Positions 2,150-45,870 of a stretch of 64,000 nt of DNA are shown here, one piece after another; position 1 is the stretch's first letter; each line of letters starts with the position of its first letter. The stretch spans positions 806,001 through 870,000 of the forward strand of contig OZ176060.1 in NCBI GenBank assembly GCA_964247055.1. The letters run 5' to 3'. The position numbers and the translations under genes are program-made. The notes under the pieces were generated by a model. The model was not told the origin of the DNA, did no database searches, and saw only the letters and a list, made by a program, of their open reading frames with translations. This DNA is from Paragordius varius. Its lineage: Eukaryota; Animalia; Nematomorpha.

Positions 2150-2722
2150 GAAAAAGCAGACCACATTTATATTATAACAAAAAAAAAATATCAAACAAAA
2201 GCAGACGATATTGAACTTTAAATGGCAGACGATTCATAGATTTATATCATAAGGCAAACGATTTAGTATATTTGAAACGACAGACGAATTTATTTCATAT
2301 GAAAAGGCAGACGATTAAATTAAAGGAAAAGGCGCAGACGACAATAATTTTAAAACCCAAAGGCAGACGATAATAAATTTAAATGATAAGGCGCAGACGA
2401 CAATAATTTGAAATCCAACAGCCGATTAAATGAATTTCAAATGAAAAGGCAGACGATTAAATGAACAAATGAATAGGCAGAAGATTAAATGAATTTCAAA
2501 TGAAAAGGTAGACGATATGAATTTCAAATGAATAGGCAGACGATTAAATGAATTTCAAATGAAAAGGCAGACGATTAAATGACAAATGAATAGGCAGACG
2601 ATTAAATGAATTTCAAATGAAAAGGCAGACGATTAAATGACAAATGAATAGGCAGACGATTAAATAAATTTGAAATGACAAAGCGCAGACGATATTAATT
2701 AAAAATCGCAAATCAGACGACA
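2150..2722 (+). repeat. Polar GCAGACGA(T) array 1 (~25-30 bp period)
   Basis: About 15 exact and several variant copies, all in the same orientation; near-perfect 58 bp dimer repeats at ~2520-2660. Confidence 0.9.
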
Positions 2723-2989
2723 TATATTTAAAGTTAAAACCAAAAATATCTAAACTAAAAAAACTAGTAAATAAATAAAATATTCATAAAAAAAATTAAA
2801 TAAAAAATTTAAAAAAAATTAAATTTATTTAATAATTTATATAAATAAGGAGAAAATTTTCAGATATTTTTAAATGAAAATATGAAACTAGAAAACTTTA
2901 TTGCATTAAAAAAAATTTAAAAAAAAATAAAAAAATTAAAAAATTTAAAACTTATAAAATTAAAACTAAAAATTTAATAAAATTAAGAA

Positions 2990-5430
2990 AAATATTTGTC
3001 TTTATATTATTTTACTCAAACAAACAAAAAGAAAATAAAAAATATTATGTAAAATATTTAACTTTAAAAGTATAAAATAAAATAATTAATTTTAATAATA
3101 ATTTACATTATTTAAAATTTATTATTATAGAATTAATTAATTAATTCAAATAATTTATTTTATTCAAATATCAGCTGTTTATGTTTTTTTAAAACAATTA
3201 TTTGTCTTTATATTATTTTACTCAAAAAAAAATAAAAAAGATTAGTTTATGTTTTTTAAAACAATTATGTGTATTTATATTATTTTACTCAAAAAAATGT
3301 TTTTTTTTATTTTTTATTGAATGAAATAAATTATAATAAAATAATTAATTTTAATAATAATTTATTTTATTTAAATATAAAATAAATTAAATTTAATTTA
3401 TTTTATTCAAATCATCAGCTGATTAGTTTATGTTTTTTTAAAACAATTATTTGTCTTTTTATTTTTTAATATTATATATATTATTTTTTTTAAAAATTAT
3501 TAATATATTATATTTTTATAAAATATTTGTTTTTTATAAAAAAAATAGAAAATTATTAATTTAATAAATTTTTATAAATTTAGTTTATGTTTTTAGTTTT
3601 ATTTTTTTATTTCTTTTGAAAAAGAAATAAAATGTGTGTTTCGTTTGATTGAAACAATGCAACAATGTTGTTTTCTAAACACTTTTTTGTTTCTTTTTTT
3701 TTCTTAAGAAAAAGCAAAAAAAAAGATTAGTTTATGTTTTTTTAAAACAATTATTAGTCTTTATATTATTTTATATGAATAATATAATGTTTTTTTTATA
3801 ATATTTCACTCCAAAAGTATTATAAAATAATTAATTTCAATAATAATATATTTTATTTAAATATCAGCTTATTTTAAAACAATTATTTGTCTTTTATTTT
3901 TTTGTTTGAAAAAAAAAGAAAAAAAATGTTTTTTGTTAATTTTATAAAATGTGTGTGTTTCGTTTGGTTGAAACAATGCAACAATGTTGTTTCTAAACAC
4001 ACTTTTTTTGTCTTTTCTTTTTTCTTAAGAAAAAGCAAAAAAAAATAGTTTATGTTTTTTTAAAACAATTATTTGTCTTTTTATTATTTTTGCTTTAAAA
4101 AATGATTTTTTTTATTTTTGAAAAATGATATTTTTTATAAAAAAAGAGAAAATTATTAAATTAATGAATTTTTATAAATTTTTATTTTATTTTTTTTTGT
4201 TTTAATAATAATTTATTTTATTTAAATATCAGCTGATTAGTTTATGTTTTTTTAAAACAATTTTTTCTCTTTTTATTTTTTTACAAATTATTTATATATT
4301 AATGTTTTTATAAAATAATATTTTTTATAAAAAAATAGAAAATCGTTATTTTTGAAAAATGAAATATATTATAATAAAATAATTAATTTTAATAGTAATT
4401 TATTTTATTTTAATATATTATTATTATTATAGAATTAATTAATTATTTAAAATAAATAATTTAATTTATTCTTCAAATATCAGCTGATTATTATTCATTT
4501 ATTTGTTTTTTTTTTAATAAAAATATTTGTCTTTATATTAGTTTATGTTTTTTTAAAACAATTATTTGTCTTTTTATTATTTTTTTTTAATAAAAATATT
4601 TTATTTTTTATTTTTAAATTTTACAAATTATTTATATATTAATATTTTTATAACTAAATAATATTTTTTATAAAAAAATAAAAAATTATTAATTTAATAA
4701 ATTTTTATAAATTTGTTTTATATTTTTTCAAAACAATTATTTGTCTTTATATTATTTTACTCAAAAAAAATATAAAAGATTAGTTTACGTTTTTTTAAAA
4801 CAATTTTTTGTCATTTTATTTTTTTAATAAAATATTTTAATTAAAATTATTGTAAAAAATATTTATATATTAATGTTTTAAAATAATATATTTTAAAAAA
4901 TAGAAAATTATTAAATTAATAATTTTAAATATCACCTGATTGAAACAATGCAACAATGTTGTTTTCTAAACACTTTTTTTTTGTTTCTTTTTTTTTCTTA
5001 AGAAAAAGCAAAAAAAAGATTAGTTTATGTTTTTTTAAAACAATTATTAGTCTTTATATTATTTTTGTTTTAAAAAGTATTTTATAATAATATTTCATTT
5101 CAAAAGTATTATAAAATAATTAATTTTAATAATTATTTATTCTTTAAACATCAGCTGTTTATGTTTTTTGAAAACAATTATTTGTCTTTTTATTTTTTTA
5201 ATATTTTAATTAAAATTATTGTAAAAAATATTTATATATTATATTTTTATAAAATATTTGTTTTTTATAAAACAAATAGAAAATTATTAATTTAATAAAT
5301 TTTTAATTTAATCTATTTTTATTTTATTTTTTTTTAAAACAATTTATTGTCTTTATATTATTTTTCTCAAAAAAAAAAGCTTATTTTATAAATAATTTAT
5401 TTAATTCTTCAAATATCAGCTGTTTAAAAC
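2990..5430. repeat. Degenerate repeat field containing older fragments of the 180 bp satellite unit
   Basis: Recurrent gattagtttatgttttttaaaacaattatttgtc and gattgaaacaatgcaacaatgttg blocks, e.g. ~3640-3745, 3955-4055, 4938-5040. Confidence 0.75.
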
Positions 5431-5433
5431 AAT

Positions 5434-6615
5434 GTTTCGTTTGATTGAAACAATGCAACAATGTTGTTTTCTAAACAAACACTTTTTTTGTTTCTTTTTT
5501 TTTCTTAAGAAAAGAAAGAAAAGAAAAGAAAAGATTAGTTTATGTTTTTAGTTTTATTTCTTTATTTCTTTCTTTATTTCTTTCTTTTGAAAAGAATAAT
5601 AAAATGTGTGTGTGTGTTTCGTTTGATTGAAACAATGCAACAATGTTGTTTTCTAAACAAACACTTTTTTTGTTTCTTTTTTTTCTTAAGAAGAAAGAAA
5701 AGAAAAGATTAGTTTATGTTTTTTAGTTTTATTTCTTTCTTTCTTTCTTTTTCTTTTGAAAAGAATAATAAAATGTGTGTGTGTGTGTTTCGTTTGATTG
5801 AAACAATGCAACAATGTTGTTTTCTAAACAAACACTTTTTTTGTTTCTTTTTTTTCTTAAGAAGAAGAAAGAAAAGAAAAGAAAAGATTAGTTTATGTTT
5901 TTTAGTTTTATTTCTTTCTTTCTTTCTTTTTCTTTTGAAAAGAATAATAAAATGTGTGTGTGTGTGTTTCGTTTGATTGAAACAATGCAACAATGTTGTT
6001 TTCTAAACAAACACTTTTTTTGTTTCTTTTTTTTCTTAAGAAGAAGAAAGAAAAGAAAAGAAAAGATTAGTTTATGTTTTTTAGTTTTATTTCTTTATTT
6101 CTTTCTTTCTTTTGAAAAAGAATAATAAAATGTGTGTGTGTGTGTGTGTTTCGTTTGATTGAAACAATGCAACAATGTTGTTTTCTAAACAAACACTTTT
6201 TTTGTTTCTTTTTTTTCTTAAGAAGAAAGAAAGAAAAGAAAAGAAAAGATTAGTTTATGTTTTTTAGTTTTATTTCTTTCTTTCTTTCTTTTTCTTTTGA
6301 AAAGAATAATAAAATGTGTGTGTGTGTGTTTCGTTTGATTGAAACAATGCAACAATGTTGTTTTCTAAACAAACACTTTTTTTGTTTCTTTTTTTTCTTA
6401 AGAAGAAGAAAGAAAAGAAAAGAAAAGATTAGTTTATGTTTTTTAGTTTTATTTCTTTATTTCTTTCTTTCTTTTGAAAAGAATAATAAAATGTGTGTGT
6501 GTGTGTTTCGTTTGATTGAAACAATGCAACAATGTTGTTTTCTAAACAAACTTTTTTTTTGTTTCTTTTTTTTCTTAAGAAAAAGCAAAAAAAAAAGATT
6601 AGTTTATGTTTTTTA
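5434..6615. repeat. ~180 bp tandem satellite, 7 units
   Basis: Unit starts (gtttcgtttgattgaaacaatgc) at 5434, 5616, 5787, 5966, 6148, 6328 and 6505; internal (GT)n, (CTTT)n and (GAAAA)n tracts vary in length. Confidence 0.95.
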
Positions 6616-6854: not shown

Positions 6855-8020
6855 TATATCGTCTGCTTCAATCCCATTTATAATCTTTAAATAATATCGT
6901 CTCTATTAATTCTAAATACTATCGTCTGATTATAATTTAGTTTATATTATCGCCTGCTTCTAAACATTAATAATAATAATATTTAAAATCGTCTGATTGA
7001 CTTTTATTTATAATCGTCTGACTTTTACTTTAAATAAAATACCGTCTACTCTAGAAACACCAAAATTAAAAATATCGACTGCTTAAATTATATGTATATA
7101 TAATCGTCTGCTTTTACTTTGAATAAAATATCGTCTGCTCTTGAACCCACAAATACAATAAAATCGTCTGCTTGATATTTATTAATAGTATATGTTATCG
7201 TTTGCTCTTAAACACCTAAATTAAAAATATCGACTGCTTAAATTATATGTATATATCGTCTAATTATTAATATTTATAGTATAAATTATCGTCTGCTCTC
7301 CACAAATAAAATAAAATCGTCTGCTTGATATATATAACCGTTTGATAGTTTAAGTTATCGTCTGCTCTTTAACACCTAAATATTAAAAATATCGGCTGCT
7401 TAAATTAAATGTATATATAATCGTCTGATTATTAATATTTAGTATGAATTACCTTCTGCTCATGATGAAAATATAATTAAATCGCCTGCTTTAGTTCTAT
7501 TTAAAATCGTCTGATTTTTAATATTTAGTATAAAAAGATCGTCTGCTTATATATAATCGTCTGATTATTTTAATTTAGTATAAGTTATCATCTGCTCTTA
7601 AACACGAAAAATTATATCATTCCAAATTCACTAATCGTCTGATGTTTACAGTATAAATTATCTTCTGCTCTTAAACACGAAAAATAGTATAACTTCAGTT
7701 CTATGTAAATCGTCTGATTATTAATATTTAGTATAAAAAGATCGTCTGCTTTAGTTCTATATAAATCGTCTGATTATTTTAATTTAGTTAAGTTATCATC
7801 TGCTCTTAAACACGAAAAATCATATCATTCCAAACTTACTAATCGTCTGTTTGTTACTCAGTGTGAATTATCGTCTGCCTTTTACTCAGTGTGAATTATC
7901 GTCTGCCTGTTACTCAGTGTGAATTATCGTCTGCCTTTAACTCAGTGTGAATTATCGTCTGCCCTTCTCCGAAATAATACAATATCGTCTGATTTTTATT
8001 TGGTAAAAATTATCGTTTGA
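6855..8020 (-). repeat. Polar GCAGACGA array 2 (reads TCGTCTGC on +)
   Basis: About 30 atcgtctg(c/a) copies in one orientation; ends with four 28 bp near-perfect repeats at 7854-7963. Confidence 0.9.
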
Positions 8021-8479: not shown

Positions 8480-10745
8480 AAAAATCAGCTGTTTAAAAAT
8501 AATAAAACATATGTTTTATATGATAAATAAAAACTCAAATTTTTTTAAAATCAGCTGATAACATAAATTTATAAAATTATTTTTGTTTTATTAATATATA
8601 TTGTATTAACTTACATATATATATATATATAAACATATCAGCTGTTTAGTTAAAAAACTATATCAAACTAATCAGCTTATTAATGAATAAATAAAAACAT
8701 ATGTTCCAATGAATGATTGAACCAACTTTCTAATTACCTATATTAAATTTTATCCTTAATTAGACGATAACGTAAATAAAAAATTTTAATTTTATATATA
8801 AAAAATATATACGTAAAAGTTATCAGCTGTTTTAGTAAAAATATATAGGAGATGATTATAAAAACACATGTTAAAATGAATGTATGAAAATTTTCTAAAA
8901 ACCCTAAATTTTATAATCAGACGATAACGTAAATAAAAAATTTTAATTTTATATATAAAAAATATAAACGTAAAAATTATCAGCTGTTTTAGTAAAAATA
9001 TATAGCAGATGATTATACATATGTAAAAATGAATGCATGAAAACTTAAATCTAAAAAACCTAAATTTTATCCTTAATCAGACGATAACGTAAATAAAAAA
9101 TTAATTTTATAGGTAAAAATATAAATAAAATAAATGTTATCAGATAATTATATAACTTTCCAATCAGCTGATATATGATAGCATAAAAACATATGTTGAA
9201 ATGAATGGAATAACTATACTTGAAAACTTAAATTTATCCTTAATCAAATAATAACGTAAATAAAAAATTAATTTTATAGTTAAAAATAAAGAAATATTTT
9301 TTTATAAATGTTATCAGCTGATTATAAAACTGTCCAATCAGCTGATTTATGAAAACACAAAAACATATGTTGAAAAGAATGAAATAACCCTAGAAAACTT
9401 AAATTTAATCCTTAATCACAGATAATGACGTAAAAATAAAAAATTAATTTTTACACAAAATTTATATTTTTATTTTTGCAGGTTTATCAAATAATTAATT
9501 AACATTATCAGCTGTGATTTTATCAAATAATAACTTAATCAGCTGATTATGATAAAAAACAATGTTAAATGAGTGCACATAACTTTATAAATACTTAAAT
9601 TTAACCCTTAATCAGATAAAGAGGTAAAAATAATAAATTAATTTATACACAAAATTTATTATTTTATTTTGCAGTTTTATCAAATAATTAATTTACATTA
9701 TCAGCTGTGATTTTTTATCAAATAATAACTTAATCAGCTGATTATGATAAAAAACAATGTTAAATGACTGCACAATAAAATTTTATAAATACTCATAAAA
9801 AATATATAAATATATAATTTTTATTTTTATTATCAGCTGATATTTTTTCACCAACAGGTGATATAAAAATGGAAATCATATGTGTAAATAAACTAATAAA
9901 ATAACTTATAATAAATCTAAAAAACGAAATTAATCCTTAATCAGACGATAACGTAAATAAAAAATTAATTTTATACGCAAAAAATTTAAATATATTTTTT
10001 ATTTGATAAATGTTATCAGCTGATTATTAGACAAAACCCAATCACCTGATTATTTATAAAAATAAAAACATGTGTTGAAATGATGACAAGAATAAACTTT
10101 AAATATCTGTAAAAACGTAAATATAATCTTAAATGTAAATAAAAAATTCATCTATATGTAAAAAATATATATTTTTATTTATTTATTCATTTTATTTGAT
10201 AAAATCTCAACTTTTTTAAGACCTAATCAGCTGATAACATGAATTTATGAAATTATTTTTGCTTTATTAATATATAAGGTGGTATAAAAAGACATAAAAA
10301 CTCAGATGTTTATTAAAAGAGACTATATCAATCTAATCAACTGATTTGTGAAAATAAAAACATGAGTTAAAATGAATTCATGAAATAACTTTATAAAAAC
10401 CTAAAAACGTAGATCTTAATCAGATAATAACGTATATTTATAAAATAAATTTTATACGTAAAAATATATAAATATATATTTTATTTAATATTAAAAAGTT
10501 ATCAGCTGATTATTACACAAATTTGTCTATTCGGGTGATATAGTAGAAACCTAGAAAACGTAATTTTATCCTTATTAATAATAATATAAATAAAATTATT
10601 ATACGCAAAAAATATATAAATATACATTTTTTTTATTCTATATTTCAAAACTTTATCAGCTGCTCATGCTATTCAAACACCTGATTTATAAAAACAGAAA
10701 CGTGTGTTGAAATGAATGCATGAAATAACATTATATAATCGAAAT
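8480..10745. repeat. Degenerate ~165-190 bp tandem repeat downstream of ERp44
   Basis: Recurrent ccttaatcagacgataacgtaaataaaaaattaatttt...ttatcagctg...acatatgttgaaatgaatg units at ~8755, 8915, 9075, 9240, 9415, 9605, 9935 and 10415. Confidence 0.8.
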
Positions 10746-10890
10746 TTATATACAAAAAAATAAAAAAAATTGACAAAAAATAATGTTTTCTAAATATAAT
10801 TTTTTTAAATAATTTGAAAACGAAAAATTTGGAATGATATTTGAAATAAAATAATTTATATATTATAAAATATTCTAAAACATTTTTAAA

Positions 10891-10933
<43 letters not shown>

Positions 10934-11545: not shown

Positions 11546-12290
11546 CTACAATTCATCACGTGGGCTGTATTCATCCTCTAGCATGGAGTAACGCGTGTAA
11601 GATGGTTTGAGTTTACTGAAGACAGATTCGACCTTTTGCGTACTTTGTTGCCCAGTGTAATCAGCTGTTTTGGCATCATCTGGTTGAGCGTTGCCGGGGG
11701 CAACAACAACGTTTCCCAAATCAATGTGTATAACATTGGAGGGCGGTGGTGGCGCGTTACCATGGTGATGCCCATGTTCAGAGTTGTGGAATTCGCGGTC
11801 CAGTTTTTCGCTAAATAAATCAGCCACAAATTGAACCAACAGCTGATGCGATGCGTGACCGGGAACAGCTGATGGTTCAAGCGCACTAAAAGGGTGCGGG
11901 AATGCAAACATGTGTGCAAATGAATCTATGGCAATGAGTGGTAAGTCAGCATCCGTTTTGCCCATATGGTGGAGTGGGTGAGCAAAAACGGTGCTACTCG
12001 CATAAACCGGCTGAATCCGATCGGCCCAAGGTGAATCAGCTGATAGAATGGTTGCCATGACAATGCGTTTGAATGTTTCAATGGCTGCTACGTCACGTCG
12101 TGGATTGTAGAAAAGTATAAGGAGCGGTTTATTCCGTTCCGTAAGCTCTTCAGCATTCTCCCGCGTGATTTCAGGGATACGGGGTGTGCAATGTCGAAAA
12201 ATCCATTCACTCATTCGATCCAACAGCTGATTGCTATCGGCTGATGGCGAAGCAGAAGGGAAATGCTCAATCGTTTGTTCATAAGCTGGT
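11546..12290 (-). CDS. ERP44: ERp44 last exon (b' domain, C-tail, RDEL*)
   Basis: Acceptor tatag (AG 12292-12291), phase 2 join AG|A = Arg giving FYRPAYEQ..., same frame as ORF 11546..12223, stop TAG at 11548-11546. Confidence 0.93.
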
Positions 12291-12298
12291 CTATAGTG

Positions 12299-12338
<40 letters not shown>

Positions 12339-14127
12339 GACCTGCCATCTTATAAGGACACATAAACACATATGTCATATATTTTCATTTTAATCTTAAA
12401 ATTTAAAAAACAAACATTTTTAAAAAATGTAGCACAAACAAACCAAACGCACCTGTAAAATAAAACGTCGTCAGCTGTTTTAGTGGCGGCGTGAGTGGCG
12501 TCAACAGCTGATTTATACTCTGGCCCTCGGGCCACAAAAATGTTACAATCATCTCGCATTAAGAAACCAATCATTTCCAACGTTTTTATTGTCAATTCAT
12601 TCTTTTTCTTTGCACTTTCTGAGGAATCACCCAAAATAGCCACAACAGCTGATTTATTTTCCCGGCTAACATCTGGCACGTGTCTATGATCATATGGCCG
12701 CATGAGTGCATGCAATTGACTGACAGATGTTATTGCATTCACCCGATATGTCAGCTGTGCGTGAATGAATGCGCTTATTGCGCTGGCATCTCTTTGCCCG
12801 CGATATTCTCCACGGCCAGCGCCCAGCCTATAAATACGCCACGTTGGATACTTTGTAATACCAGCTGTGTCTCGAACAGCTGGAAACAGTTCCGCATTCA
12901 GGCGGGCAAACATGACTGTCCTCCGTGGTTCATTCATGTGATCACCTGATTTTGGGGAGGGAAAATATAGAATTCTAATTTATATTAAATAACAAATTAT
13001 TTTACTCATTAAATATTTTTAACAATTATTAGATAATCTATTATTAATATAAAATTTTTATTTTGAGGATTTCATTAAATAATTTTAAATATTTTATTTT
13101 TAACAAAAACATGACTGTCCGCCGTGGTTCATTCATGTGATCACCTGTTTTTAGGGAAATTTATGAAAAAAAAATATATATATATTTTAGATATTTTTTA
13201 AAAATTTTATTATTTTTTGATAAATTTTATAATTTATTTTGAGGATTTCATTAAATTTAAATTATTAATATGCTTTTATTTTTAACAAAAACATGACTGT
13301 CCGCCGTGATTCATTCATGTGATCACCTGTTTTAAGAAGGGAAGGAAAATTTATAGAAAATATGTAAATATATATTAAATAATTTTTTTAAATTTATATA
13401 TTATTTATAATTTTATAATTAAAAAAAGTTGATTAAACTACTTAACTAATAAATATTATTTTTAATTTTTAACAAAAACATGACTGTCCTCCGTGGTTCA
13501 TTCATGTAATCACCTGATTTTAAAAAGGGATTATATATATATATATATTATAAATTATATTAAATAACAAATATTCATAAAAATTTTTAACAATTATTAG
13601 ATAAACTATTATTGATATAATATTTTTATTTTAAATTTTTAAATATTTGAAATTTTATTATTTTTAGATCTTAATTAACTGTCCGACGTGGTTCATTCAT
13701 GTAATCACTGATGAAGGGAAATCAATTGAAATGTTTTATTATAAATTAATTCAGTTATATTTTCAATTTATACATATATATAATAATGAGATTGAATATA
13801 TTTTTAAAAATTTTAAACTAATAAATGTTTTGTTTTATATTTTAATTTTTTAATAAAAATTGGTTTCATTCACGTGATCACCTGTTTTTTGATCATAAAA
13901 ATAAATATATATATATATATATATATATTTATAATAATAATATTTAAAGGTAGTTAATTATAAATTTTCTTATTTTAATAGCTGATAATAAAAGGAATAA
14001 ATCTATTTAATATTTTAGTTCATACACTGATCACCTGTTTATATACATATAAATAATTATAAATTATATTAAATCTAAATTATACAAATATATACAAAAG
14101 AATTTATATATTAATTATATATATATA

Positions 14128-14158
<31 letters not shown>

Positions 14159-16169
14159 CATAAAATTTAAAGGTAGTTAATTATAGATTTTCTTTTATTG
14201 ACTGATAATAAAATAATTTTATTCCATATTTCAGTTCATTCACCTGGTCACCTATTTTTCCCGGGAAAAATATAAATAAAATAAAATAAAACAAAATAAA
14301 AATTTCATTTATATAATTAACATTTTTTTATTGTCATTTTAAGCATTAAATCATTACATCACCTGATTTTAAGGAAATAAGGATAAATTGATACAAAATT
14401 ATATATTCGTTAAGTTTTTAATTTAAATTTTGGCCGCTAAACAAATTTTTCATTTATTAAAATCAATTTAAATAAAACTGTTGAAATGATAATTTAAACA
14501 AATTAAATGTTGTTCTGTAATCACCTGTTTTTGAGGAAAAATAAAATAATAATATAAACAAAAATCCTTTAATTTTAAACAAATTTAATGAGGTTCATTC
14601 ACGTAATCACCTGTTTTAAAGAATAAATAGTCATAAATGAAATGATTATTTTAAGCAAATTGAATGTTGTTCATTCATGTAATCACCTGTTTTTGATTTA
14701 AAAAATAAATAGACAAATCCTAAAATGATTATTTTTAACAAATTAAATGTTGTTAATCATGTAATCACCTGATTTTGTAGGGGGATTATTTCAAAAATAT
14801 AACCATAAATCATGTAATAAATAAATATTATAAGAGAATTAAAATGGTTATTTAGAGAATTTTTTTAAAAAAAAATTTAATATATAATTAATCAATTCAA
14901 ATTTAGCCCACCTTGAATAATAAATTATGTATTTTTAAACTATAATATAACTCCTTATTAATAAGAAATACATCTTTATTGAGTATAGTTTATTATTTTT
15001 CTAGTTATATATATATGATAATTTAAAATTAAATTATTTAATTTTTTGAAATAATATTTAAAAATATAGCTAATTTATTATTTAAGGGTAAACAGCTGAT
15101 TTATCAAAAGAGGAAATTTTTCAAATGAGGAATTAAATAAAAAAGATTAAAATTGATTCAAAACGTAAAAACAGCTGATCTATTAGAAAAAATATGAAAA
15201 CTACCAATTTTATTAACTAGATATTAATTAATTATCTAAAACATCCATTCATTTTTAAAAATTCAAATCAACATCAAAATTTCAAACCAATGTATAATTT
15301 AATGAAAACAGCTGATCATATTTTTAAAAAAGCTACCAATCTTATTGATTAGGTAAAAAATATTTTATAATTTTAACCACATTAAAATAAAGCTTTAAAA
15401 TTTTAAATGTCATCAATTGATAACAGCTAATTTTTTTAACAAAAATTAATATAAAAACAGGTGATATGTTTTTTTAAAAAAACAGCCAACTATTTATGTT
15501 TTTTTTGTTAAATATGTTTAAAATTTAAAAAAACATTTCATAGAAAAAGTTAAAAAGACTAAACCAGCTGATTTAAGACATGTGTTTATTTTATTCCACA
15601 TTACTTAAAACCCAAATAAAAATAATTTTTTATATATAAAAATGTTTGTTTACCAGCTGATTTTATGCTTTTTATACAATATTTCTTCAAAAAATTAATT
15701 AACACAAAAATAAATTTACTTTTATAAATTTTAGTTGAAATATAAAACTTTATTTGCATAAAATATATTAATTTACCAGCTTATTTTATCAAAAAATAAC
15801 TTTTAAAAAAACAATTATTGCCAGGTGATTTTATATTTTAAACAATTATTAACTTTAAAAATAAAATATTTAACAGCTGATTTTATATTTTTAACAAATA
15901 ATAATTTTTAGAATACCGGCTGATAATATATTTTTGACAAAAATAAACTCAGAAAATAAATTTTAATAAATTATTACCAGCTGATTTTATAATTTCCGCC
16001 TCCTTTTGGAGTTTGTCCACCAGCTGTTTCCATGCTTCCGTGAAAATGGGATTTGACATTTGACTAAAAGGGCACCAATCGGCATAAAAATTTACGAAAA
16101 CTAAATCGTAACCTTTTATGGTTCGGTTAAAAGTTTCATCTGTTAACTCTTCCGGTTCGGAGGGAAAAT
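11546..16169 (-). CDS. ERP44: ERp44 (ER-resident thioredoxin-domain protein 44); confident part = join(16169..15978, 12945..12453, 12290..11546)
   Basis: Hand translation gives VFVNFYADWCPFSQM (family motif VNFYADWCRFSQM), ITKYPT...EYRGQR, EITRENAEELTE..P.LILF, HPLHH.GKT.ADLPLIAIDSF.HM and a C-terminal S.F.KLKPS..RYS.L...RDEL. All introns are GT-AG with matching phases. Confidence 0.93.
12453..12945 (-). CDS. ERP44: ERp44 exon (end of a domain and b domain)
   Basis: Acceptor aaatcag|GTGATCAC, donor TACAG|gtgcgt; 493 nt, phase 1 to phase 2; same frame as ORF 12350..12937. Confidence 0.9.
13108..14775 (-). repeat. Tandem degenerate echoes of the ERp44 acceptor and exon start (cag|GTGATCACATGAATGAACCACGG..GACAGTCATG)
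   Basis: Near-complete copies at ~13110, 13292, 13479 and 13678; progressively shorter copies to ~14770. Confidence 0.9.
15085..15975 (-). repeat. Degenerate echoes of the ERp44 exon end and donor (AAAATCAGCTG|gtaa)
   Basis: On +, copies of the ttaccagctgatttt type at ~15560, 15650, 15772, 15818, 15870 and 15915, decaying away from the exon. Confidence 0.65.
15978..16169 (-). CDS. ERP44: ERp44 exon carrying the thioredoxin a-domain motif WCPFS
   Basis: Not in the ORF track. 192 nt between aaacag| and |gtaata; reads FPSEPEELTDETFNRTIKGYDLVFVNFYADWCPFSQMSNPIFTEAWKQLVDKLQKEAEIIKSA(G). Confidence 0.92.
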
Positions 16170-16526
16170 CTGTTTTATTTAGAAAAAATTAAAATTTCAA
16201 ATAAAATATTATTTAATTAATATAGTTTGAAAATATCAAAAATATATAAATAATATTTTAATATAAAATTTTAAATAACATTTTGTAAATAAATAAAAAA
16301 ATTTATAAATCATAAGGAAAACTATCTATTAAAAATTATTTTAACCAAAAATTTATTTTTTTTTAAATAAATTTTAAATTTAAATAAAAAATTATTTAAA
16401 CTATAAAAAAAGAAAGTGTGTATAACTTTTTAAAATAATATCAAAACAATTTAAAAAATATATATTTAGTATTTTAATATAAGTTTTTTAAAAAATTTAA
16501 TAAAAATCAAAATATTAAAAATATTA

Positions 16527-17292
16527 AAAGTTCATCTGTTAACTCTGCAGGTTCGGACGGAAAATCTAAAAATATGAATTTAAGTATTTTAAATGAAAAA
16601 TTATTTTTAAAAAATTAAAAAATAATTTAAAATATATTTAAAAAAGTTTGAAATTTTAAAAAAAATATTATAAAAAGTTTTAAATTTAATAAAAAATCAT
16701 ATCAGTTAATTAATTAATAAGTTAGAAATAAAAATTTTTAATTTATAAAAAAACATCTTTTAATAAATGTTTCATCTTTTAATAAAATATGAATTAAAAA
16801 AAATTAAATCAATATAAATTATTTTTTTCAAAAAAAAATTAAGTAATATTTAAAAAAAAATATAAAAATTATTTAAAATAGAATAAATTTAAACTTAATA
16901 TATTTAAAAATTAAAAGTTTCATCTGTTAACTCTAAGGGTTCGGACGGGAAATCTAACATAAAATTTATGAAAAATATAAAAAATTTAAATTTTAAATAA
17001 ATTTTTAACTAATTTATAAAATTTTAAATATTAAAAAAAAGTTTAATTGTAAATTCTACTAAATAATAACAAAATTAACTTTAAAAGGTAAAAAAAGTGT
17101 TATAAAAAAGTTTTACAATGTATAATTTTAAATTTATTAAAAATAATTTATTATATTAAAATAAATTTAAAAAAAATTTATAAAAAATTTCAAAGTTGTA
17201 AAATTTATATAATAAATTATTAGTTTTTAATAAAAAAATTTAATTTTAAAAATAAATTTTTAAAAAAATCATCTGTTAACTCTTGTGGTTAA
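16527..17292 (-). repeat. Echoes of the acceptor and first ~40 nt of ERp44 exon 16169-15978
   Basis: ttcatctgttaactct..ggttcgga.ggaaaatct copies at ~16527-16568, 16916-16955 and a partial at 17268-17292. Confidence 0.85.
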
Positions 17293-17799: not shown

Positions 17800-20520
17800 A
17801 GCGCAGACGATATTAAATTTAGCTATAAAAAGGGCAGACGATTTATATATATGACAGCAGACGATATTAAATTTTTACCATACGATTTGTACTATAGGAG
17901 CAGACGATATTTATTTATATATAAATGGTACAGACGATAAGTTAGATGATATTAATCTATAAAAATGGCAGGCGATTATTAAATGACTATAAAAAGCAGA
18001 CGATATTAGTTTTGAGTAAAAGCAGACGATATTAATTGTGAGTTCAAAAAGAGACTATATTAAAGGCTATAAAAAGGGCAGACGATTTATATATGGCAGC
18101 AGACTGTATTAATCATGACTATAATAAGCAAACGATTTGTGTTATAACACAGACGATATAAATTTTAAAAGACTAGCAGACGATATTAAATTTGGCTATA
18201 AAAAGGGCAGATGATTGGTATATATATATATATATATATGGCAGCAGACTTTATTAATTTTGACTGTAAAAAGAGCAGACTACTTTTTTCAAAAATATAT
18301 ATATAGAGAGCAGCAGACGATATTATATTTTGACTATAATCAAACAGTTGATATTAAAGAAGCAGACGATATAAACTATGATTATAAGGGCAGCAGACGA
18401 TATTAATTTTGAGAAGAAAAAGCAGACAATCTATAGAAGCAGACGATTTTTATACTATAAAAAGGGCAGACAACATAAAAAGAAACTATTTGTGTTAATG
18501 AAGCAGACGATTTTTAATTTTACCATTAGGAAAGCAGATGACTTGTAAAACAACAACAGACGATAATTATAGATAAAGACTGGGAAAAAGCAGACCACAT
18601 TTATATGATTTTAAACAAAAAAATTAAATCAAACAAAAGCAGACGATATTGAACTTAAAATGGCAGACGATTAAATGAATTTGAAAAGGCAGACGATAAA
18701 ATCTAATGACAAACCACTCGGTAATAACTGTCGACAAAGCAGACTATAATTAACTTAAAATCCAAAAGCAGAAGATTTAAACCAAATGAAAAGGCAGACG
18801 ATATTAATTTTATATATGCTAAAGGCAGATGACAAAAAATTTAAAATCTTAAAGCAGACTATTAAATGACATCAAAAGGCAAACAATAATAAATTTAAAT
18901 GACAAACCGACCGCAGACGATAATAATTAAAATCCAAAAGCAGACGATAAGATGAATCTGAAAGGCTACAATAAATTTAAATGACAAACCGCAGACGATA
19001 ATAATTAAACAAAAGCAGACGATTAAAACCAAATAAAAATGCAGACTATGATAATTTAATATCAAGCGGACGACAATAATTTAAAATCCTAAAGCAGACG
19101 ATTAAATGAAAAATGGCAGTCAAATATTTGTATCATAAGGCAGACGACATTAAAAATAAAATCCTAAGGCAGACGATTAAATCGTTCTGAAGGGCAAACG
19201 ATAATAAATAGAAATGACAAACCGCAGATGACAAAATTTTATATTATAAAGGCATAAATTATATTTTAATGACAAAGCAGACGATATTCAATTTAAAATT
19301 ATCATTTAAATAAATCACGTTGAAAGGGCAGACGATACGTTAAATAAAAAGACGATATTATTAGAAAGTATACGCAGCAGACGATTAAAATAAATATAAT
19401 ACAATAAAATCATAATCATATATATAAATGATATCATTAGAATGTATACGCAGCAGACGATTAAAATAATTTTCAAATGACAATAATTTAAAATCATCAT
19501 ATATATAAATGATGTTAGGCAGACGATATTAAATTCAAATAAAAAAGCAGACGATATTATTAGAAAGAATACGCAGACGATATATATATTAAGCTTCAAA
19601 TGACAATAATTTAAAATCATTATATATATAAATAATGTTGAAAGGCAGACGATATTCAAATAAAAAAGCAGACGATATTATTAGAAAGAATACGCAGCAG
19701 ACGATATATATTAAGCTTCAAATGACAATAATTAAAATCATCAATCATATATAAACTATGTAGATCGGGCAGACGATATGGTTAAAATACCAAAGCGCAG
19801 ACGATATTATTAGAAACAATATGCAGCAGACGATTAAATGGATTTCAAAGACAATAATTTAAAATCATTAATCATAAATAAATGCAAAAAGGGCAGACGA
19901 TACGTTAAAACAAAGCGCAGACGATTTTATAAAAAGAATACGTAGCAGACGATTTTTTAAAAAGAATACGTAGCAGACGATATCATTAGATAGAATATGC
20001 AGCAGACGATATCATTAGATAGAATATGCAGACGATTTTATAAAAAGAATACGTAGCAGACGATATTAAATTCAAATAAAAAAGCAGACGATACATTAAA
20101 AAAAATACGCAGATGATATTATTAGAGAGAATATGCAGACGATAATTTTAGAGAGAATATGCAGACGATTTTATAAAAAGAATACGTAGCAGACGATTTT
20201 ATAAAAAGAATACATAGCAGACGATATTAAATTCAAATAAAAAAGCAGACGATATCATTTTGGAGAATACGCAACAGACGATTTTATTACGTAGCAGACG
20301 ATATTATTGGAAAGAAACGCAGCAGACAATTTTATAAAAAGAATACGTAGCAGACGATATTATTAGGAGAATACGCAGCAGACGACATTAAATTTAAAAA
20401 AAAAGCAGACGATATCATTAGAAAAAATACGTAGCAGACGATATCTTTTTAAAAGAATAAGCAGCAGACGATAATATTAGAGAATACGTAGCAGACGATT
20501 AAATTAATTTTCGAGAGGGC
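17800..20520 (+). repeat. Polar GCAGACGA(T) array 3
   Basis: On the order of 80 copies, ~25-40 bp period, one orientation, in three sub-blocks with different linkers. Confidence 0.92.
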
Positions 20521-20703: not shown

Positions 20704-22142
20704 ATAAAAATAAAAAAATAAAATTATTACATTTAAAAAATTAATTAAATAAAAATAAAATTAATAAATTTCAAACTTTAAAATAAAAAAAATTTAATAA
20801 AAATAAATTAAATAAAATTTTTATTTAAAATTAGATTAAAGCTAAAAAGTAAATTAAAAAAAAATTATTAATAAATTTAAAAATTAACTAAATTTAATAA
20901 TAAAGTTTATTTAAAAAAAATAAAAATTTATTAATAAAATAAAAAAATTAAATTAAAAATAATTTTTGAAAACTAAATTAAAAATTTCATTTTTTAACAT
21001 AAAAAATTGAAATTATAAAAAATTAAATTAAAATTATTAAAATAATTAATTAAATTAAAAAATAATTTTAAATAAATTAATATTTATCGATAAAATTTTA
21101 AAATATGAATTATTTTTTGATTTTTTAAAAAAAATTAAAGTAAAAAAATAAATTTTATTTAATTCTAAAATTTACAAAAAAAATATTTTATTATATCCTA
21201 AAAAAATTACGAAAAGATTTACTAAATATATAAAACTAATTTCATATAAATAAATAATTTTTAATAATTTTATATTATTATAAAATAATTATCTAAAAAA
21301 CTAATTTTAATAATATAACAATAAATAAAATTAAACTAGACTAAATAATTTAAATAATTTTAAAACTCAATTTTTTAAACAAAATAAAAATTTGAAATTA
21401 ATAAAAATTTAAATAAATACATTATTAATAATTTTTTAAAACATAAGATTTTAATCTAAAAAAATTAAATAATTTTTCAAAAACTTACAAATTTTAAAAT
21501 TAAAAAAAAAAACTAAATTTATAACATCAAAAGTAAAAAAAATTAAATTAATATTAATTTTTATAATTTTTTAAAACTTAATTTAAAATTTAAAAACTAT
21601 AAATATTAAATTAAAAATATAAATAAGTTTTAAAATTTTTATAATTTTAAATTTATAAAATTTAAAGCTTAAAAAATTAAAATCACAATAAATTGATATT
21701 AATTTTTAAAAATTGTTTAATTTTATGATAATTTTATATAAATTATTTATTAGAATAATTTAAATAACTAATGTAATTTTTTAAAACTATAAATATTAAA
21801 TTAAAATTATAAAATAAGTTTTATAATTTTAATTTCTCAAATCTTTATAAAACTCATTTAAACTTAAAAAAATTAAATAGTTTTCAAAACTAATAAAATT
21901 TAAAAATTAAAAATAATTTAACTAATTTTTATATTTTTAAAACCAAAAATATTAAATTAAAAATATGAAATAAGTTTTATATTTTAAATTTTTAAAATTT
22001 AAAACAAAAATTTATAGATTTTGAAAATTTAAAATCTAAAATAAAACTAATTATAATAATTTTTATAATTTTTAACAATTAATAAAATTTTAAACAAAAA
22101 TTTATAGATTTTGAAAATTTCAAAACTAAAATAAATTTATAC

Positions 22143-22536
22143 TTTGAAAACTTTGGGGTGAATTTAAATTTTTTTCTTTTTCTTGATGATTTAAATTTTG
22201 TTGAGAATTTTGGTTTTTACTTTGTTGTGAAACAATGTTGCTTTCAATCCGATTATTTATTAAATTTTCTTTATGATTTAATTGCGGAGTTAAAAAACCA
22301 CCATCTTTAGAATCAAAAACTTCATTTGAATTTAAATTCTGTTCTTGATTAACATTTTGATTCAAATTTTGATCTTGTTTCGGAGTTATAAAACCACCAT
22401 CTTTGGAATCAAAAACTACATTTGAATTCTGTTCTTGAACATTTTGTTGATAATTTCCTGAAACATAAAAATAAAAAGTTGCTAAAAAATAAATTTGCCA
22501 AAAAAGTGAATTTGAGGTGAAAAATAAAATTTCCAT
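22143..22536 (-). CDS. ERP44: Candidate ERp44 first exon: signal-peptide-like N-terminus plus Q/N-rich region with a duplicated VFDSKDGGF motif
   Basis: ORF 22126..22536 begins MEILFFTSNSLFWQIYFLATFYFYVSG (hydrophobic core, V-S-G cleavage-like). Phase-1 donor CAA A|gtataa at 22142 is compatible with the exon at 16169, and a GC-richer leader lies at 22537-22580. Linkage to ERp44 is inference; it could belong to another transcript. Confidence 0.45.

Positions 22537-24589: not shown

Positions 24590-24590
<1 letters not shown>
24180..24590. repeat. Degenerate ~20-25 bp repeat (aacattttt(t)aagcaaaa) flanking the large satellite
   Basis: At least 10 imperfect copies seen. Confidence 0.65.
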
Positions 24591-41682
<17,092 letters not shown>

Positions 41683-44170: not shown

Positions 44171-44194
44171 TCTATTTATAATCATCTGTTTTCT

Positions 44195-45870
44195 TTTATT
44201 GTCTGCCGTTTTTCTAAAACCAGCTGTTTTACCATGTTTATATCCATCTGCTTGATATGCTAATATTTTTTTCTGTTTATAATCGTCTGCTTTTCTGATA
44301 TTTTTTCAATTTTATTCGTCTGCCGTTTTCCTTATAAAAACCAGCTGTTTTTAACAATGTTTATATTCGTCTGCTTGAATCGCACTATATAACTTTTGAT
44401 GTATCTAATCGTCTGTCTTTTCTTCTAAATTCATTATATTCTCCTTAAGTCTGTCTGCTATTTCAACTTTTATTATTCGTCTGCCGTTTTTCTTATAAAA
44501 ACCAGCTTTTTATATACGTCTGCTTGAATTGCACTAATTAATTTTTATATAGCTAATCGTCTGTTTTTTCAATTAAATATTTATATTTATAATCGTCTGC
44601 TTTTTCAATGAAATATTTATAATCGTCTGCTTTTCTTCTAAATTATTCATTGTTCGTCTGCTTTCTTTTATTCGTCTGCCGTTTTTCTAAAACTAGCTTT
44701 TGTTTATATTCTTCTGCTAGAATTGTTTGATAATTAACTTCTTTTGATGTGTTTAATCGTCTGCTTTTTCAATTAGATAATTATATTCGTCTGCTTTTTC
44801 AATTAAATATTTATATTCGTCTGCTTTTCTTCTAAATTCATTATTCGTCTGCCGTTTTTCTTATAAAAACCAGCTTTTGTTTATATTCGTCTGCTTGAAT
44901 TACTTACTAATTAACTTTTTTTGATGTATCTTATCGTCTGCTTTTTCAATTAAATATTAATATCAATTATTTCTTCAAAATCAATATCATTCATTCATTT
45001 ATTCACCTGCTTTTAATTTTTTTTCCATTTATAATCACTGATTATCTTCTAAATTTATTATTCGTCTGCTATTTTCACTTTTATATTCGTCTGCTTAATT
45101 TGCTAATATATTTTCTGTTTATTATCGTCTGCTTTTAAAATTTTTTGGTTTCACCTGCTTTTAAATTTTTTTCCATTTATAATCATCTGCTTTTCTGCTA
45201 CAATTTTATTTGTCTGCCGTTTTTATTATTCGTCTGCCGTTTTTCTTATAATAACCAGCTTTTGTTTATATTCGTCTGCTTGAAATGCTTGCTAATTAAC
45301 TTTTGATGTATCTAATTGTCTGCTTTTTCAATGAAATATTTATAATCGTCTGTTTTTCTTCTAAATTATTCATTGTTCGTCTGCTTTATTTTATTCGTCT
45401 GCCGTTTTTCTTATAAAAACCAGCTGTTTTTAACCATGTTTTTTTTTCCTCTGCTTGAATTGCAGTAATTAACTTTTGATGTATTTAATCGTCTGCTTTT
45501 TTTTCAAATTCATTATTCGTCTGCTTTTCTGCTATTATTATTCTTACTTGTCTGCTTTTATTCTAAATTCATCAACTTTTAATCGTCTGCCGTTTTTCTC
45601 ATAGAAACTAGCTTTTGTATATATTCGTCTGCTTGAATGCTTACTAATTAACTTTTGATGTATCTAATCGTCTGCTTTTTAAATTTTTTTCTATTTATAA
45701 TCGTCTGCCTTTTCTCCTAAATTATTCATTATTCGTCTGATATTTCAACTTTTATTATTCGTCTGCCGTTTTTTTATAAAAACCAGCTTTTGTTTATAAT
45801 TGTCTGCTTGAATTAAATTTTGATGTATCTAATCGTCTGATTTTTCAATTAAATATTTATAATCATTTGC
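44195..45870 (-). repeat. Polar GCAGACGA array 4 (reads TCGTCTGC on +)
   Basis: About 45 ttcgtctgc/atcgtctgc copies in one orientation with a higher-order ~150-190 bp unit. Confidence 0.92.

What the first reader, a model, noticed from the sequence alone, without database searches (positions are those of the whole stretch)
2150..45870. Four polar GCAGACGA arrays alternate in orientation and bracket the satellites
Orientation runs forward (2150-2722), reverse (6855-8020), forward (17800-20520), reverse (44195-45870). Each forward/reverse pair encloses a homogeneous satellite (5434-6615; 24590-41682), while the confident gene exons lie outside the pairs. The linkers differ between arrays and even between sub-blocks, so only the 8-mer and its polarity are shared. 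This looks like directional boundary elements (insulator, loop anchor, pairing or DNA-elimination boundary) or highly diverged fold-back transposon arms (inference). Caveat: the candidate ERp44 exon 1 would fall inside the second pair.
Basis: partly seen in the sequence, partly recalled or inferred. Interest (0 to 1): 0.78.

Follow-up and report, generated by a model that had tools for sequence, protein, structure and literature searches.

The report
Polar word arrays flanking four genes
Stacks of one nine-letter DNA word (GCAGACGAT) sit at the outer edges of a few housekeeping genes in this very AT-rich animal genome and face inward toward the genes; the word is kept while the DNA between copies decays, so something probably reads it, but the arrays occur in only two related chromosome segments and are neither a genome-wide boundary code nor a jumping gene.

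Summary
There are 161 copies of GCAGACGAT (at most 1 mismatch). All lie in four strand-pure arrays (+,-,+,-) plus one sparse patch, with a modal spacing of 28 bp.

- **Distribution:** the arrays occur in just two paralogous segments, C11 764-852 kb and 1045-1051 kb, and C10 3.25-3.43 Mb. At least 85% of all motif pairs in the 110-Mb genome lie there.
- **Not fold-back arms:** opposed arrays share no spacers or termini.
- **Satellite bracketing:** the paralogue lacks both satellite 1 and array 1, and a conserved ORF lies inside pair 2.
- **What is consistent:** the arrays flank genes. 5' arrays (cyclin A x3, ERp44 x2) read ATCGTCTGC on the sense strand. 3' arrays (cyclin A2, ERp44, eIF1', eIF5A) read GCAGACGAT. 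CAGCTG-rich genic DNA stops at arrays 1 and 2.
- **Constraint:** cyclin A paralogues keep 69-76% of copies in place, against about 40% in a neutral simulation.

Best reading (about 0.4): polar binding-site platforms that delimit gene units. The rivals are a non-functional local minisatellite seeded from the eIF5A start codon, and an RNA-level signal.

The scan met the same word before on neighbouring DNA (s1-368129, the cyclin A array).

The parts
2146..2722 (+). Array A1: 16 copies of GCAGACGAT (at most 1 mismatch), with a 31/58-bp higher-order unit. It lies about 3.5 kb downstream of cyclin A copy 2 (+ strand gene, C11:800.7-804.7 kb) in sense orientation. Its spacers are related to A3.
5433..6615 (.). 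Satellite 1: a 179-bp unit x6.7 at 94% identity. It is absent from the C10 paralogous segment.
6855..8020 (-). Array A2: 33 copies, with 28-bp and about 155-bp higher-order blocks. It lies about 3.5 kb downstream of the ERp44 stop codon in sense orientation. The C10 counterpart A2' has 64 copies.
8757..9950 (+). Sparse patch A2b: 4 copies of TCAGACGAT inside 157-195-bp tandem units that also carry CAGCTG and CAGATG words. It has the opposite polarity to A2.
11546..16169 (-). ERp44-like gene, exons 2-4. It has thioredoxin domains, a CPFS active-site motif and a C-terminal RDEL. Exon 1, which should carry the signal peptide, was not located.
17800..20520 (+). Array A3: 72 copies on the 5' side of ERp44, whose sense strand here reads ATCGTCTGC. 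The C10 counterpart A3' has 43 copies.
22126..22536 (-). Gene X: an ORF with a signal-peptide-like N-terminus and NVVFDSKDGGFITP repeats.
24590..41682 (.). Satellite 2: (TAA)n tracts separated by a cassette of about 140-150 bp. It is also present in the C10 paralogue (about 4.5 kb there).
44195..45870 (-). Array A4: 36 copies of the variant GCAGACGA(A/T)T, with 165-179-bp higher-order units. Its C10 counterpart A4' (39 copies) starts 160 bp after the stop codon of an intact eIF1 last exon, in sense orientation.
45900..47300 (-). Decayed inverted eIF1-flank fragment next to A4. It matches the better-preserved eIF1' exon beside A4' on C10.
56280..60050 (+). eIF1/SUI1 gene on the + strand, with echo copies of its last-exon acceptor edge in the intron. 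No GCAGACGAT array lies within 14 kb downstream.

Best explanation
The four arrays belong to a small local family of about a dozen minisatellite-like arrays. Each array is built from one constrained 9-10-bp word, (A/G)GCAGACGAT, set in fast-evolving A-rich spacers.

The arrays sit at the outer edges of gene units for cyclin A, ERp44, eIF1 and eIF5A, in two paralogous chromosome segments. Arrays on the 5' side read ATCGTCTGC on the gene's sense strand. Arrays on the 3' side read GCAGACGAT. A unit that has both is therefore bracketed by inverted arrays. The +,-,+,- pattern in the window is two such units (cyclin A2 and ERp44) lying side by side, with satellites filling the space between them.

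Polarity within an array comes for free from tandem duplication; this step is shown. The word is kept copy by copy while the spacers randomise; this step is shown, with caveats.

My inference is that the arrays act as high-avidity, orientation-dependent platforms for a sequence-specific factor. That factor most likely binds DNA, perhaps a zinc-finger-type protein. It would mark off an active gene unit from the surrounding extremely AT-rich and satellite DNA. In effect this is a barrier or insulator, or a polar roadblock to transcription or replication leaving or entering the unit.
For: **The arrays are real and local**
- The arrays are real and strand-pure.
- Triple-motif arrays occur only on C10, C11 and their redundant contigs C32 and C40.
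- Of 385 motif pairs in the genome, 328 lie in the loci I hold, and 31 listed elsewhere are isolated.

**Geometry relative to genes**
- All three cyclin A paralogues have a 3-4-kb array whose last copies lie 25-45 bp before the ATG, followed by a TATA-like stretch.
- A3 and A3' lie on the 5' side of ERp44 in the same orientation.
- 3' arrays are in sense orientation in four lineages: A1 after cyclin A2; A2/A2' after ERp44; A4' 160 bp after the eIF1' stop; and the eIF5A downstream arrays on C11 and C10.

**Domain edges**
- CAGCTG/CACCTG words run at 6.8-8.4 per kb through gene bodies and 3' flanks, right up to A1 and A2.
- They are absent from the arrays, from both satellites and from 16170-41682.

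**Constraint**
- In the ATG-anchored three-way alignment of cyclin A arrays, 69-76% of copies are still a motif at the aligned place in a paralogue. Neutral simulations at matched spacer divergence give 40% +/- 17%.
- Each paralogue keeps 32-36 copies per 1.5 kb, against 12 +/- 3 in the simulations.
- Within the cyclin A arrays only 7-32% of spacers still have a similar partner, yet 64-89 motifs persist.

**Strand asymmetry beyond the word**
- Spacers of unrelated lineages are A-rich on the motif strand: AT skew is +0.15 to +0.35 in 8 of 11 arrays.

**Analogues**
- The gypsy insulator has 12 Su(Hw) sites in 340 bp with variable AT-rich spacers (PMC2374998).
- Plasmodium SPE2/PfSIP2 arrays are oriented and confined to a few landmark positions (PMC2829057).
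Against: - No binding protein, transcript or chromatin data exist.
- The system covers only four gene families in two paralogous regions, which is odd for a general boundary mechanism.
- The orientation rule rests on about 7 array lineages. One is a clear exception: the eIF5A upstream arrays are in sense orientation. The rule is not statistically significant (about 0.1).
- Cyclin A copy 1 and the C11 eIF1 gene lack a 3' array.
- A3 also lies downstream of gene X in the 'wrong' orientation.
- ERp44 exon 1 was not found, so A3 could be intronic.
- My first conservation test (column identity) turned out to be mostly ascertainment: 0.82-0.84 observed against 0.76 expected neutrally.
- Spacer misalignment may inflate the apparent neutral divergence used.
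Confidence: 0.4

Rival explanations
1. The arrays are a non-functional local minisatellite family. The word began as the eIF5A start (ATG GCA GAC GAA = M-A-D-E). This genome makes tandem 'echo' copies of exon edges, and such echoes were re-amplified into 28-bp arrays. Segmental duplication then spread them within one neighbourhood and its paralogue. Apparent conservation of the word would reflect turnover, because units with the word are the ones re-amplified, and not any reading by the cell.
For: - The eIF5A locus shows 5-6 upstream echo copies of acceptor + ATG + 7 codons, which contain GCAGACGA.
- A copy of the start-codon context heads the downstream array.
- A1 spacers retain weak similarity to the codons that follow: 5.5 against 4.2 for shuffled spacers. 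A few A1/A3 units carry ATGGCAGACGAT.
- The arrays are confined to one region and its paralogue.
- Copy numbers differ about 2-fold between paralogues, and young homogeneous blocks exist.
- Exact copies thin out with distance from the cyclin A start.
- Higher-order periods of 155-180 bp are typical of satellites.
Against: - 24-26 of 32-36 copies are positional orthologues kept since the cyclin A duplications, which is retention and not regeneration.
- Apart from the weak excesses in A1 and A4', the dense arrays (A2, A3, A4, cyclin A) show essentially no similarity to eIF5A beyond the core.
- G/C elsewhere in spacers decays fast: 55-62% is retained.
Confidence: 0.25
2. The arrays are an RNA-level polar signal. 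They are transcribed outward from the gene unit, as read-through at the 3' side and as divergent antisense transcription at the 5' side. The RNA then carries (GCAGACGAU)n in an A-rich context full of AAUAAA-like hexamers. This recruits an RNA-binding factor, either SR-like or a termination factor, that ends or processes these transcripts.
For: - In 6 of 7 array lineages the GCAGACGAT strand is the one an outward-moving polymerase would copy into RNA.
- Spacers are A-rich on that strand across unrelated spacer families. AATAAA/ATTAAA are 3-13 times commoner on it in most arrays.
- CAGACGA fits the SRSF1 functional-SELEX consensus SRSASGA (PMC3241662).
- The word also occurs in sense orientation in coding exons of cyclin A (two copies 23 bp apart in all three paralogues) and at the eIF5A start.
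Against: - There are no RNA data.
- The SRSASGA match is post hoc and the consensus is loose.
- A2/A2' and the eIF5A downstream array show little skew.
- The eIF5A upstream arrays break the rule.
Confidence: 0.15
3. The arrays are boundaries of programmed DNA elimination. They would mark where satellite-rich DNA is cut out of somatic chromosomes, leaving the gene units.
For: Satellites lie between inward-facing arrays, and the A3-satellite-A4 arrangement is conserved in both paralogues. Polar flanking signals are known for ciliate eliminated sequences (own knowledge).
Against: - The arrays occur at only two regions of the genome, although satellites are common elsewhere.
- Satellite 1 and A1 are missing in the paralogue.
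- The cyclin A arrays have no satellite.
- A conserved ORF lies inside pair 2.
- No germline/soma data are available.
Confidence: 0.05
4. The arrays are diverged fold-back or other transposon arms, or subterminal transposase-binding repeats.
For: The arrays are opposed and made of short tandem units, as in fold-back elements (own knowledge). One dispersed repeat family on C1 carries a single ATCGTCTGC about 45 bp from its end.
Against: - Opposed arrays share no spacer families.
- Outer and inner flanks show no inverted similarity above shuffles.
- There is no transposase ORF inside.
- There are no dispersed copies of the structure.
- Single unpaired arrays exist at cyclin A.
Confidence: 0.03
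5. The arrays are small-RNA unit arrays, piRNA-like, in which each word is a mini-promoter, as with the nematode Ruby motif.
For: The arrays form strand-pure clusters of a short motif in AT-rich DNA, and the 28-bp period is close to small-RNA precursor size (own knowledge of C. elegans 21U loci).
Against: - The two U6 genes share an upstream element and a TATA box with no resemblance to the word, so it is not an snRNA-type PSE.
- There are only about a dozen arrays.
- There are no small-RNA data.
Confidence: 0.04

Closest known systems
gypsy insulator Su(Hw) binding-site array (Drosophila)
   Same: [quoted passage not shown] The gypsy array has 12 sites in 340 bp, about 28 bp per site (PMC2374998), which is the modal spacing here.
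   Different: The arrays here hold 16-89 copies over 0.6-4 kb. They are not inside a transposon, they come in inverted pairs around genes, no binding protein is known, and the core is unrelated to the Su(Hw) consensus.
SPE2 arrays bound by PfSIP2 (Plasmodium falciparum)
   Same: Both occur in an extremely AT-rich genome and consist of oriented tandem arrays of one motif. 94% of SPE2 sites are confined to a few landmark positions at the border of coding and non-coding DNA, upstream of particular genes (PMC2829057).
   Different: SPE2 is bipartite, is spaced by 12 or 120 bp, and is found at every chromosome end. Here the arrays flank four housekeeping genes in two internal paralogous segments, on both the 5' and 3' sides.
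Minisatellite families sharing a core sequence (Jeffreys-type; own knowledge)
   Same: Both are tandem arrays with different repeat units at different loci that share only a short G/C-containing core. Copy number is unstable, differing about 2-fold between paralogues.
   Different: The human core family is dispersed genome-wide and the core is thought to promote recombination. This family is local and gene-flanking, and individual copies are retained in place.
Convergent CTCF sites at loop anchors, and polar Ter/Tus or rDNA fork-barrier and terminator arrays (own knowledge)
   Same: Both involve orientation-dependent elements placed in opposite orientation on the two sides of a domain. Clusters of sites are found at strong boundaries.
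   Different: The word has no sequence resemblance to those sites. The arrays are not genome-wide, and no evidence on loops, fork pausing or termination is available here.
Fold-back (FB) transposons (own knowledge)
   Same: Both have opposed arms made of short tandem repeats around a central segment.
   Different: Arm similarity, common termini and dispersed copies were all tested and are absent.

Membership tests
Fold-back transposon | The two arms are inverted copies of each other (same subrepeat families) | tested here: not met
   No spacer family is shared between A1 and A2 or between A3 and A4. A1 instead shares spacers with A3, which has the same orientation.
Fold-back transposon | Conserved outer termini or terminal inverted repeats (with target-site duplication) | tested here: not met
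   Local alignment of outer and inner flanks in inverted orientation scores within the range of 200 shuffles.
Fold-back transposon | Multiple dispersed copies; transposase in some copies | tested here: not met
   Arrays occur only in two paralogous regions. No transposase-like ORF of 90 aa or more lies inside the pairs.
Insulator-type binding-site array (gypsy Su(Hw)-like) | Cluster of same-orientation sites with a conserved core and variable AT-rich spacers | tested here: met
Insulator-type binding-site array (gypsy Su(Hw)-like) | Core conserved by selection, not by recent amplification alone | tested here: met
   69-76% of copies are kept in place between cyclin A paralogues, against 40% +/- 17% in neutral simulations, and 32-36 copies are kept against 12 +/- 3. 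The simpler column-identity test was inconclusive after correction for ascertainment.
Insulator-type binding-site array (gypsy Su(Hw)-like) | Bound by a dedicated protein; enhancer-blocking or barrier activity | not testable with these tools
   This needs DNA-affinity, ChIP or reporter assays.
Insulator-type binding-site array (gypsy Su(Hw)-like) | Sits between differently organised domains | tested here: inconclusive
   CAGCTG-type words stop at A1 and A2 and are absent between ERp44 exon 2 and the end of satellite 2. This is descriptive only and comes from one region.
Genome-wide directional loop anchors (CTCF-like) | The same oriented motif marks domain borders throughout the genome | tested here: not met
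   At least 85% of motif pairs lie in two regions. Many of the sampled singletons on C1 (11 of 20) belong to dispersed repeats.
Exon-edge echo arrays of this genome | Units are recognisable decaying copies of the adjacent exon edge | tested here: inconclusive
   This is met for the eIF5A upstream array. For A2, A3, A4 and the cyclin A arrays there is essentially no similarity beyond the core, and A1 and A4' show only weak excesses. The cyclin A arrays show a mild decay gradient.
Nematode-type piRNA motif clusters | Motif related to the snRNA proximal sequence element | tested here: not met
   The two U6 genes share an upstream element unlike the word.
Nematode-type piRNA motif clusters | Small RNAs arise at a fixed distance from each motif | not testable with these tools
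   No small-RNA data are available.
Protein-coding repeat | Period a multiple of 3 and an open frame through the array | tested here: not met
   The modal period is 28 bp, and only short accidental ORFs are present.

The most novel reading that the evidence does not exclude
A gene-bracketing polar boundary system. Tens of copies of one 9-bp word stand in opposite orientation at the 5' and 3' edges of individual gene units. They would act as one-way barriers to transcription, replication forks or loop extrusion, isolating highly used genes inside an almost pure A/T and satellite landscape. Such a system could have been born recently from the start codon region of eIF5A.
Probability: 0.25. Interest if true: 0.75.

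Novelty: new variant of a known kind. Interest (0 to 1): 0.55.

Why it matters
If the word is read by a factor, this is an unusually clear and simple natural case. The arrays are kilobase-long and single-motif, their orientation tracks the two ends of a gene unit, and almost every other G/C in the surrounding non-coding DNA has decayed. That makes the factor easy to fish out and its polarity easy to test. The case would show how genes are insulated in an extreme-composition animal genome. The eIF5A link also offers a visible route by which a coding-sequence fragment could become a cis-element. If the word is not read, the locus is still a good example of how local duplication and ascertainment can mimic 'boundary elements'.

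Tried and rejected
1. **Column identity between paralogues as proof of selection.** Motif G/C identity is 0.80-0.90 against 0.55-0.62 for spacer G/C. A neutral simulation gave 0.76 for motif columns from ascertainment alone. I replaced this test with a copy-retention test.
2. **Promoter-array reading for all arrays.** It holds for cyclin A. A1, A2 and A4 fade into AT-rich DNA with no gene start beyond them.
3. **ERp44 exon 1.**
   - The ATG just past A3 is not conserved in C10.
   - The gene X ORF has no usable GT donor at the tempting position, reading CAGGA and not CAGGT.
   - A BLAST comparison of the two upstream regions was uninformative.
   - Exon 1 stays unlocated.
4. **snRNA PSE / Ruby-motif idea.** Negative at the U6 genes.
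5. **Relation between the two satellites.** They share only (GAAA)n low-complexity similarity.
6. **Literature search for the word itself.** It returned only primers.
7. **Rfam and tRNA scans of the window.** Both were empty.
8. **C32 and C40 as independent loci.** They are 100% copies or a chimeric join of C10 and C11.
9. **Organism.** I did not verify this. A paper on that phylum gives genome sizes of 200-300 Mb for the species it studied, against 110 Mb here.


Full report
**Observation**

The 8-mer GCAGACGA occurs 111 times in the window where 0.02 is expected. Allowing one mismatch to the 9-mer GCAGACGAT gives 161 copies, and every one lies in an array:
- A1: 2201-2685, +, 16 copies
- A2: 6858-7984, -, 33 copies
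- A3: 17803-20491, +, 72 copies
- A4: 44198-45832, -, 36 copies

Strand purity is complete. The modal spacing is 28 bp, most spacings fall in 24-33 bp, and multiples occur where copies have decayed. The conserved core is (A/G)GCAGACGAT, and A4 prefers GCAGACGA(A/T)T. TRF confirms the two satellites and shows higher-order periods of 58 and 155-180 bp inside the arrays. A 28-bp period and stops in all frames rule out coding. No Rfam family or tRNA is present in the window. The window is extremely AT-rich: only the arrays, the ERp44 exons and the eIF1 gene region rise above 27% G+C.

**Genome-wide distribution**

The window is C11:806001-870000 of a 110.6-Mb assembly. The exact 9-mer occurs 1366 times, against 227 for the reversed control.

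Three copies at array spacing occur only on C10, C11, C32 and C40. Of 385 motif pairs in the genome, 328 lie in the loci I fetched and 31 listed elsewhere are isolated pairs. That leaves about 26, which is about what the isolated-pair background would give.

C40 is a 100% copy of C10. C32 is 100% C10 on one side and 100% C11 on the other, joined through the (TAA)n satellite, so neither is an independent locus.

Singletons sampled on C1 lie in 30-39% G+C DNA. Nine of 20 lie about 45 bp from the end of one dispersed repeat family, and 2 of 20 lie in another. That accounts for much of the singleton background excess.

So this is not a genome-wide code. It is a family of about a dozen arrays in C11:764-852 kb and 1045-1051 kb, and in C10:3.25-3.43 Mb.

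**The two regions are paralogous**

C10:3340001-3370000 matches window 4.4-27 kb in inverted order at 75-88% identity. Together with the adjoining stretch C10:3330001-3340000, it carries:
- A2' (64 copies), the sparse patch, ERp44' and A3' (43 copies)
- gene X'
- the (TAA)n satellite
- A4' (39 copies), with an intact eIF1 last exon beside it

It lacks satellite 1 and any A1 partner. The A3-satellite-A4 arrangement therefore predates the duplication and counts as one event. The A1-satellite-A2 arrangement is specific to C11.

Spacer families confirm the lineages: {A1, A3, A3'}, {A2, A2'}, {A4} and {three cyclin A arrays}. Nothing is shared between the opposed partners A1/A2 or A3/A4. Inverted alignment of outer and inner flanks scores no better than shuffles. 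The two satellites share only low-complexity similarity. With no transposase ORF, the fold-back transposon reading fails its defining tests.

**What the arrays flank**

Just upstream of the window, both cyclin A copies on C11 and the one on C10 each have a 3-4-kb array of 64-89 copies. It reads ATCGTCTGC on the sense strand. Its last copies lie 25-45 bp before the ATG and are followed by a TATA-like stretch.

A3 and A3' lie on the 5' side of ERp44 in the same relative orientation.

On the 3' side, four lineages read GCAGACGAT on the sense strand:
- A1, about 3.5 kb after cyclin A copy 2
- A2 and A2', about 3.5 kb after the ERp44 stop
- A4', 160 bp after the stop of eIF1' on C10, with A4 beside a decayed inverted eIF1 fragment on C11
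- arrays about 1 kb after the eIF5A stop on both contigs

The window's +,-,+,- pattern is therefore equally well described as two gene units, cyclin A2 and ERp44, each bracketed by arrays that face inward, with satellites in between.

This reading survives the paralogue comparison better than 'arrays bracket satellites', but it is not a law:
- Cyclin A copy 1 and the C11 eIF1 gene have no 3' array.
- The eIF5A upstream arrays are in sense orientation.
- A3 is also downstream of gene X.
- With about 7 lineages the rule is not significant.
- For four arrays, alternation alone has probability 1/8.

**A second line of evidence for edges**

CAGCTG/CACCTG words, the other common G/C-containing words here, run at 6.8-8.4 per kb through gene bodies and 3' flanks right up to A1 and A2. 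They are absent from A1, A2 and A3, from both satellites, and from the whole 25.5 kb between ERp44 exon 2 and the end of satellite 2.

The spacers of unrelated array lineages are A-rich on the motif strand. AT skew is +0.15 to +0.35 in 8 of 11 arrays, and AATAAA/ATTAAA are mostly 3-13 times commoner on that strand. Polarity therefore extends beyond the word.

**Is the word under constraint?**

The naive test compares paralogous arrays column by column. Motif G/C is retained at 0.80-0.90 against 0.55-0.62 for spacer G/C. That looked strong, but a neutral simulation showed that choosing motif columns in one lineage already yields 0.76. I discount the test.

A fairer test uses the ATG-anchored cyclin A alignment. 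There, 69-76% of motif copies are still motifs at the aligned place in a paralogue. Fifteen neutral simulations at matched spacer divergence gave 40% +/- 17%, with a maximum of 0.69. Each real paralogue keeps 32-36 copies per 1.5 kb, where neutral decay leaves 12 +/- 3.

In the cyclin A arrays only 7-32% of spacers still have a similar partner, yet 64-89 motifs persist.

I conclude that individual copies are maintained. One caveat: misalignment of AT-rich spacers may exaggerate the neutral rate.

**Origin lead**

GCA GAC GA(A/T) is the Ala-Asp-Glu/Asp of the eIF5A start. Upstream of eIF5A there are 5-6 tandem 'echo' copies of acceptor + ATG + seven codons, and a start-like copy heads the downstream array.

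Echoes of exon edges are common in this genome. Examples are the ERp44 exon 2 acceptor and the eIF1 last exon, and earlier notes report more.

Beyond the core, only A1 shows a clear residue of the eIF5A codons, with a smaller excess in A4'. The other dense arrays do not. The word may thus have been seeded from eIF5A, but this is a lead, not a result.

**Mechanism**

Shown:
- The arrays are tandem and polar.
- They are placed locally, at the flanks of genes.
- Copies are retained in place.
- The composition is strand-asymmetric.

Inferred: a sequence-specific factor reads the word, and the arrays act as polar platforms that delimit gene units.

The anatomy matches the gypsy insulator, which has 12 Su(Hw) sites in 340 bp with variable AT-rich spacers (PMC2374998). 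It also matches the oriented SPE2/PfSIP2 landmark arrays of AT-rich Plasmodium (PMC2829057).

An RNA-level variant is not excluded, in which outward transcripts carry GCAGACGAU. CAGACGA fits the SRSF1 functional consensus SRSASGA (PMC3241662), but that match is post hoc.

The snRNA-PSE / piRNA-promoter idea failed at the U6 genes. DNA elimination cannot be tested here and fits the distribution poorly.

**Relation to earlier scan notes**

The same word was reported beside cyclin A on the neighbouring window (s1-368129), with the same 'something reads it' reading. I re-derived that independently and added the control for ascertainment.

Notes on CAGCTG (s1-368128) and on exon-edge echoes (s1-261283, s1-253019, s1-252891, s1-253125) supplied leads that I checked in part.

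None of the contigs I handled looked human.

**Verdict**

It is best filed as a new variant of homotypic binding-site or minisatellite arrays with a gene-bracketing polarity. Interest is moderate because the feature is local and its reader is unknown.

Noticed in passing
window 22126-22536 (-); L001:7980-8558 (+): Gene X is a conserved ORF with a signal-peptide-like N-terminus (MEILFFTS.SLFWQIYFLATFY.YVS). It carries 2 (C11) or 4 (C10) repeats of about NSNxVF(D/E)SKDGGFITP. It has no Pfam hit and is open in both paralogues despite about 12% G+C surroundings.
   Followed up: partly
L011:5150-6200 (C11:1045150-1046200): Upstream of eIF5A there are 5-6 tandem echo copies of its 5' acceptor + ATG + first seven codons. 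Several keep M-A-D-E-D-F-E with only third-position changes (GCT GAT for GCA GAC), as if they were short upstream ORFs or alternative first exons.
   Followed up: partly
window 16500-17300 (-): Three decaying copies of the ERp44 exon 2 acceptor edge (GATTTTCC.TCCGAACC...GAGTTAACAGATGAA) lie at spacings of about 330-380 bp in the upstream intron or flank. The C10 paralogue has the same pattern.
   Followed up: partly
G000 contigs C32 (whole) and C40 (whole): C32 joins 100% C10 sequence to 100% C11 sequence through the (TAA)n satellite. C40 is a 100% duplicate of C10:3345-3351 kb. These are probably assembly alternatives and not real loci.
   Followed up: yes
C1:2.06-2.91 Mb (L015, L017-L021, L023-L025): A dispersed repeat family of at least 400 bp carries one ATCGTCTGC about 45 bp from its 3' end. 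This part of C1 has 30-39% G+C, far above the window's 12%, so composition differs greatly between contigs.
   Followed up: partly
L007:341/364, L010:739/762, L005:9256/9279: All three cyclin A paralogues carry two sense-strand copies of the word 23 bp apart inside a coding exon (...PEAD(E/D)...LEQTVTL...), just before the cyclin box.
   Followed up: no
window 16170-41682: There is not a single CAGCTG, CAGGTG or CACCTG in 25.5 kb (ERp44 upstream, A3, gene X, satellite 2), against 7-8 per kb in the adjacent gene bodies and 3' flanks.
   Followed up: partly
L039:1430-1500, L040:1430-1500 (C3): Two identical U6 genes share an upstream element TTGCTTYAAAAYGCMAAAGTTGG and a TATATATACA box. These would serve as a reference for snRNA promoters of this genome.
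   Followed up: no
L035:7524-9927 (C10:3337.5-3339.9 kb): A4' is a young homogeneous higher-order array (periods 138 and about 475 bp, 81-94% identity). Its spacers are unrelated to those of A4 on C11, so the same position holds a replaced array.
   Followed up: partly
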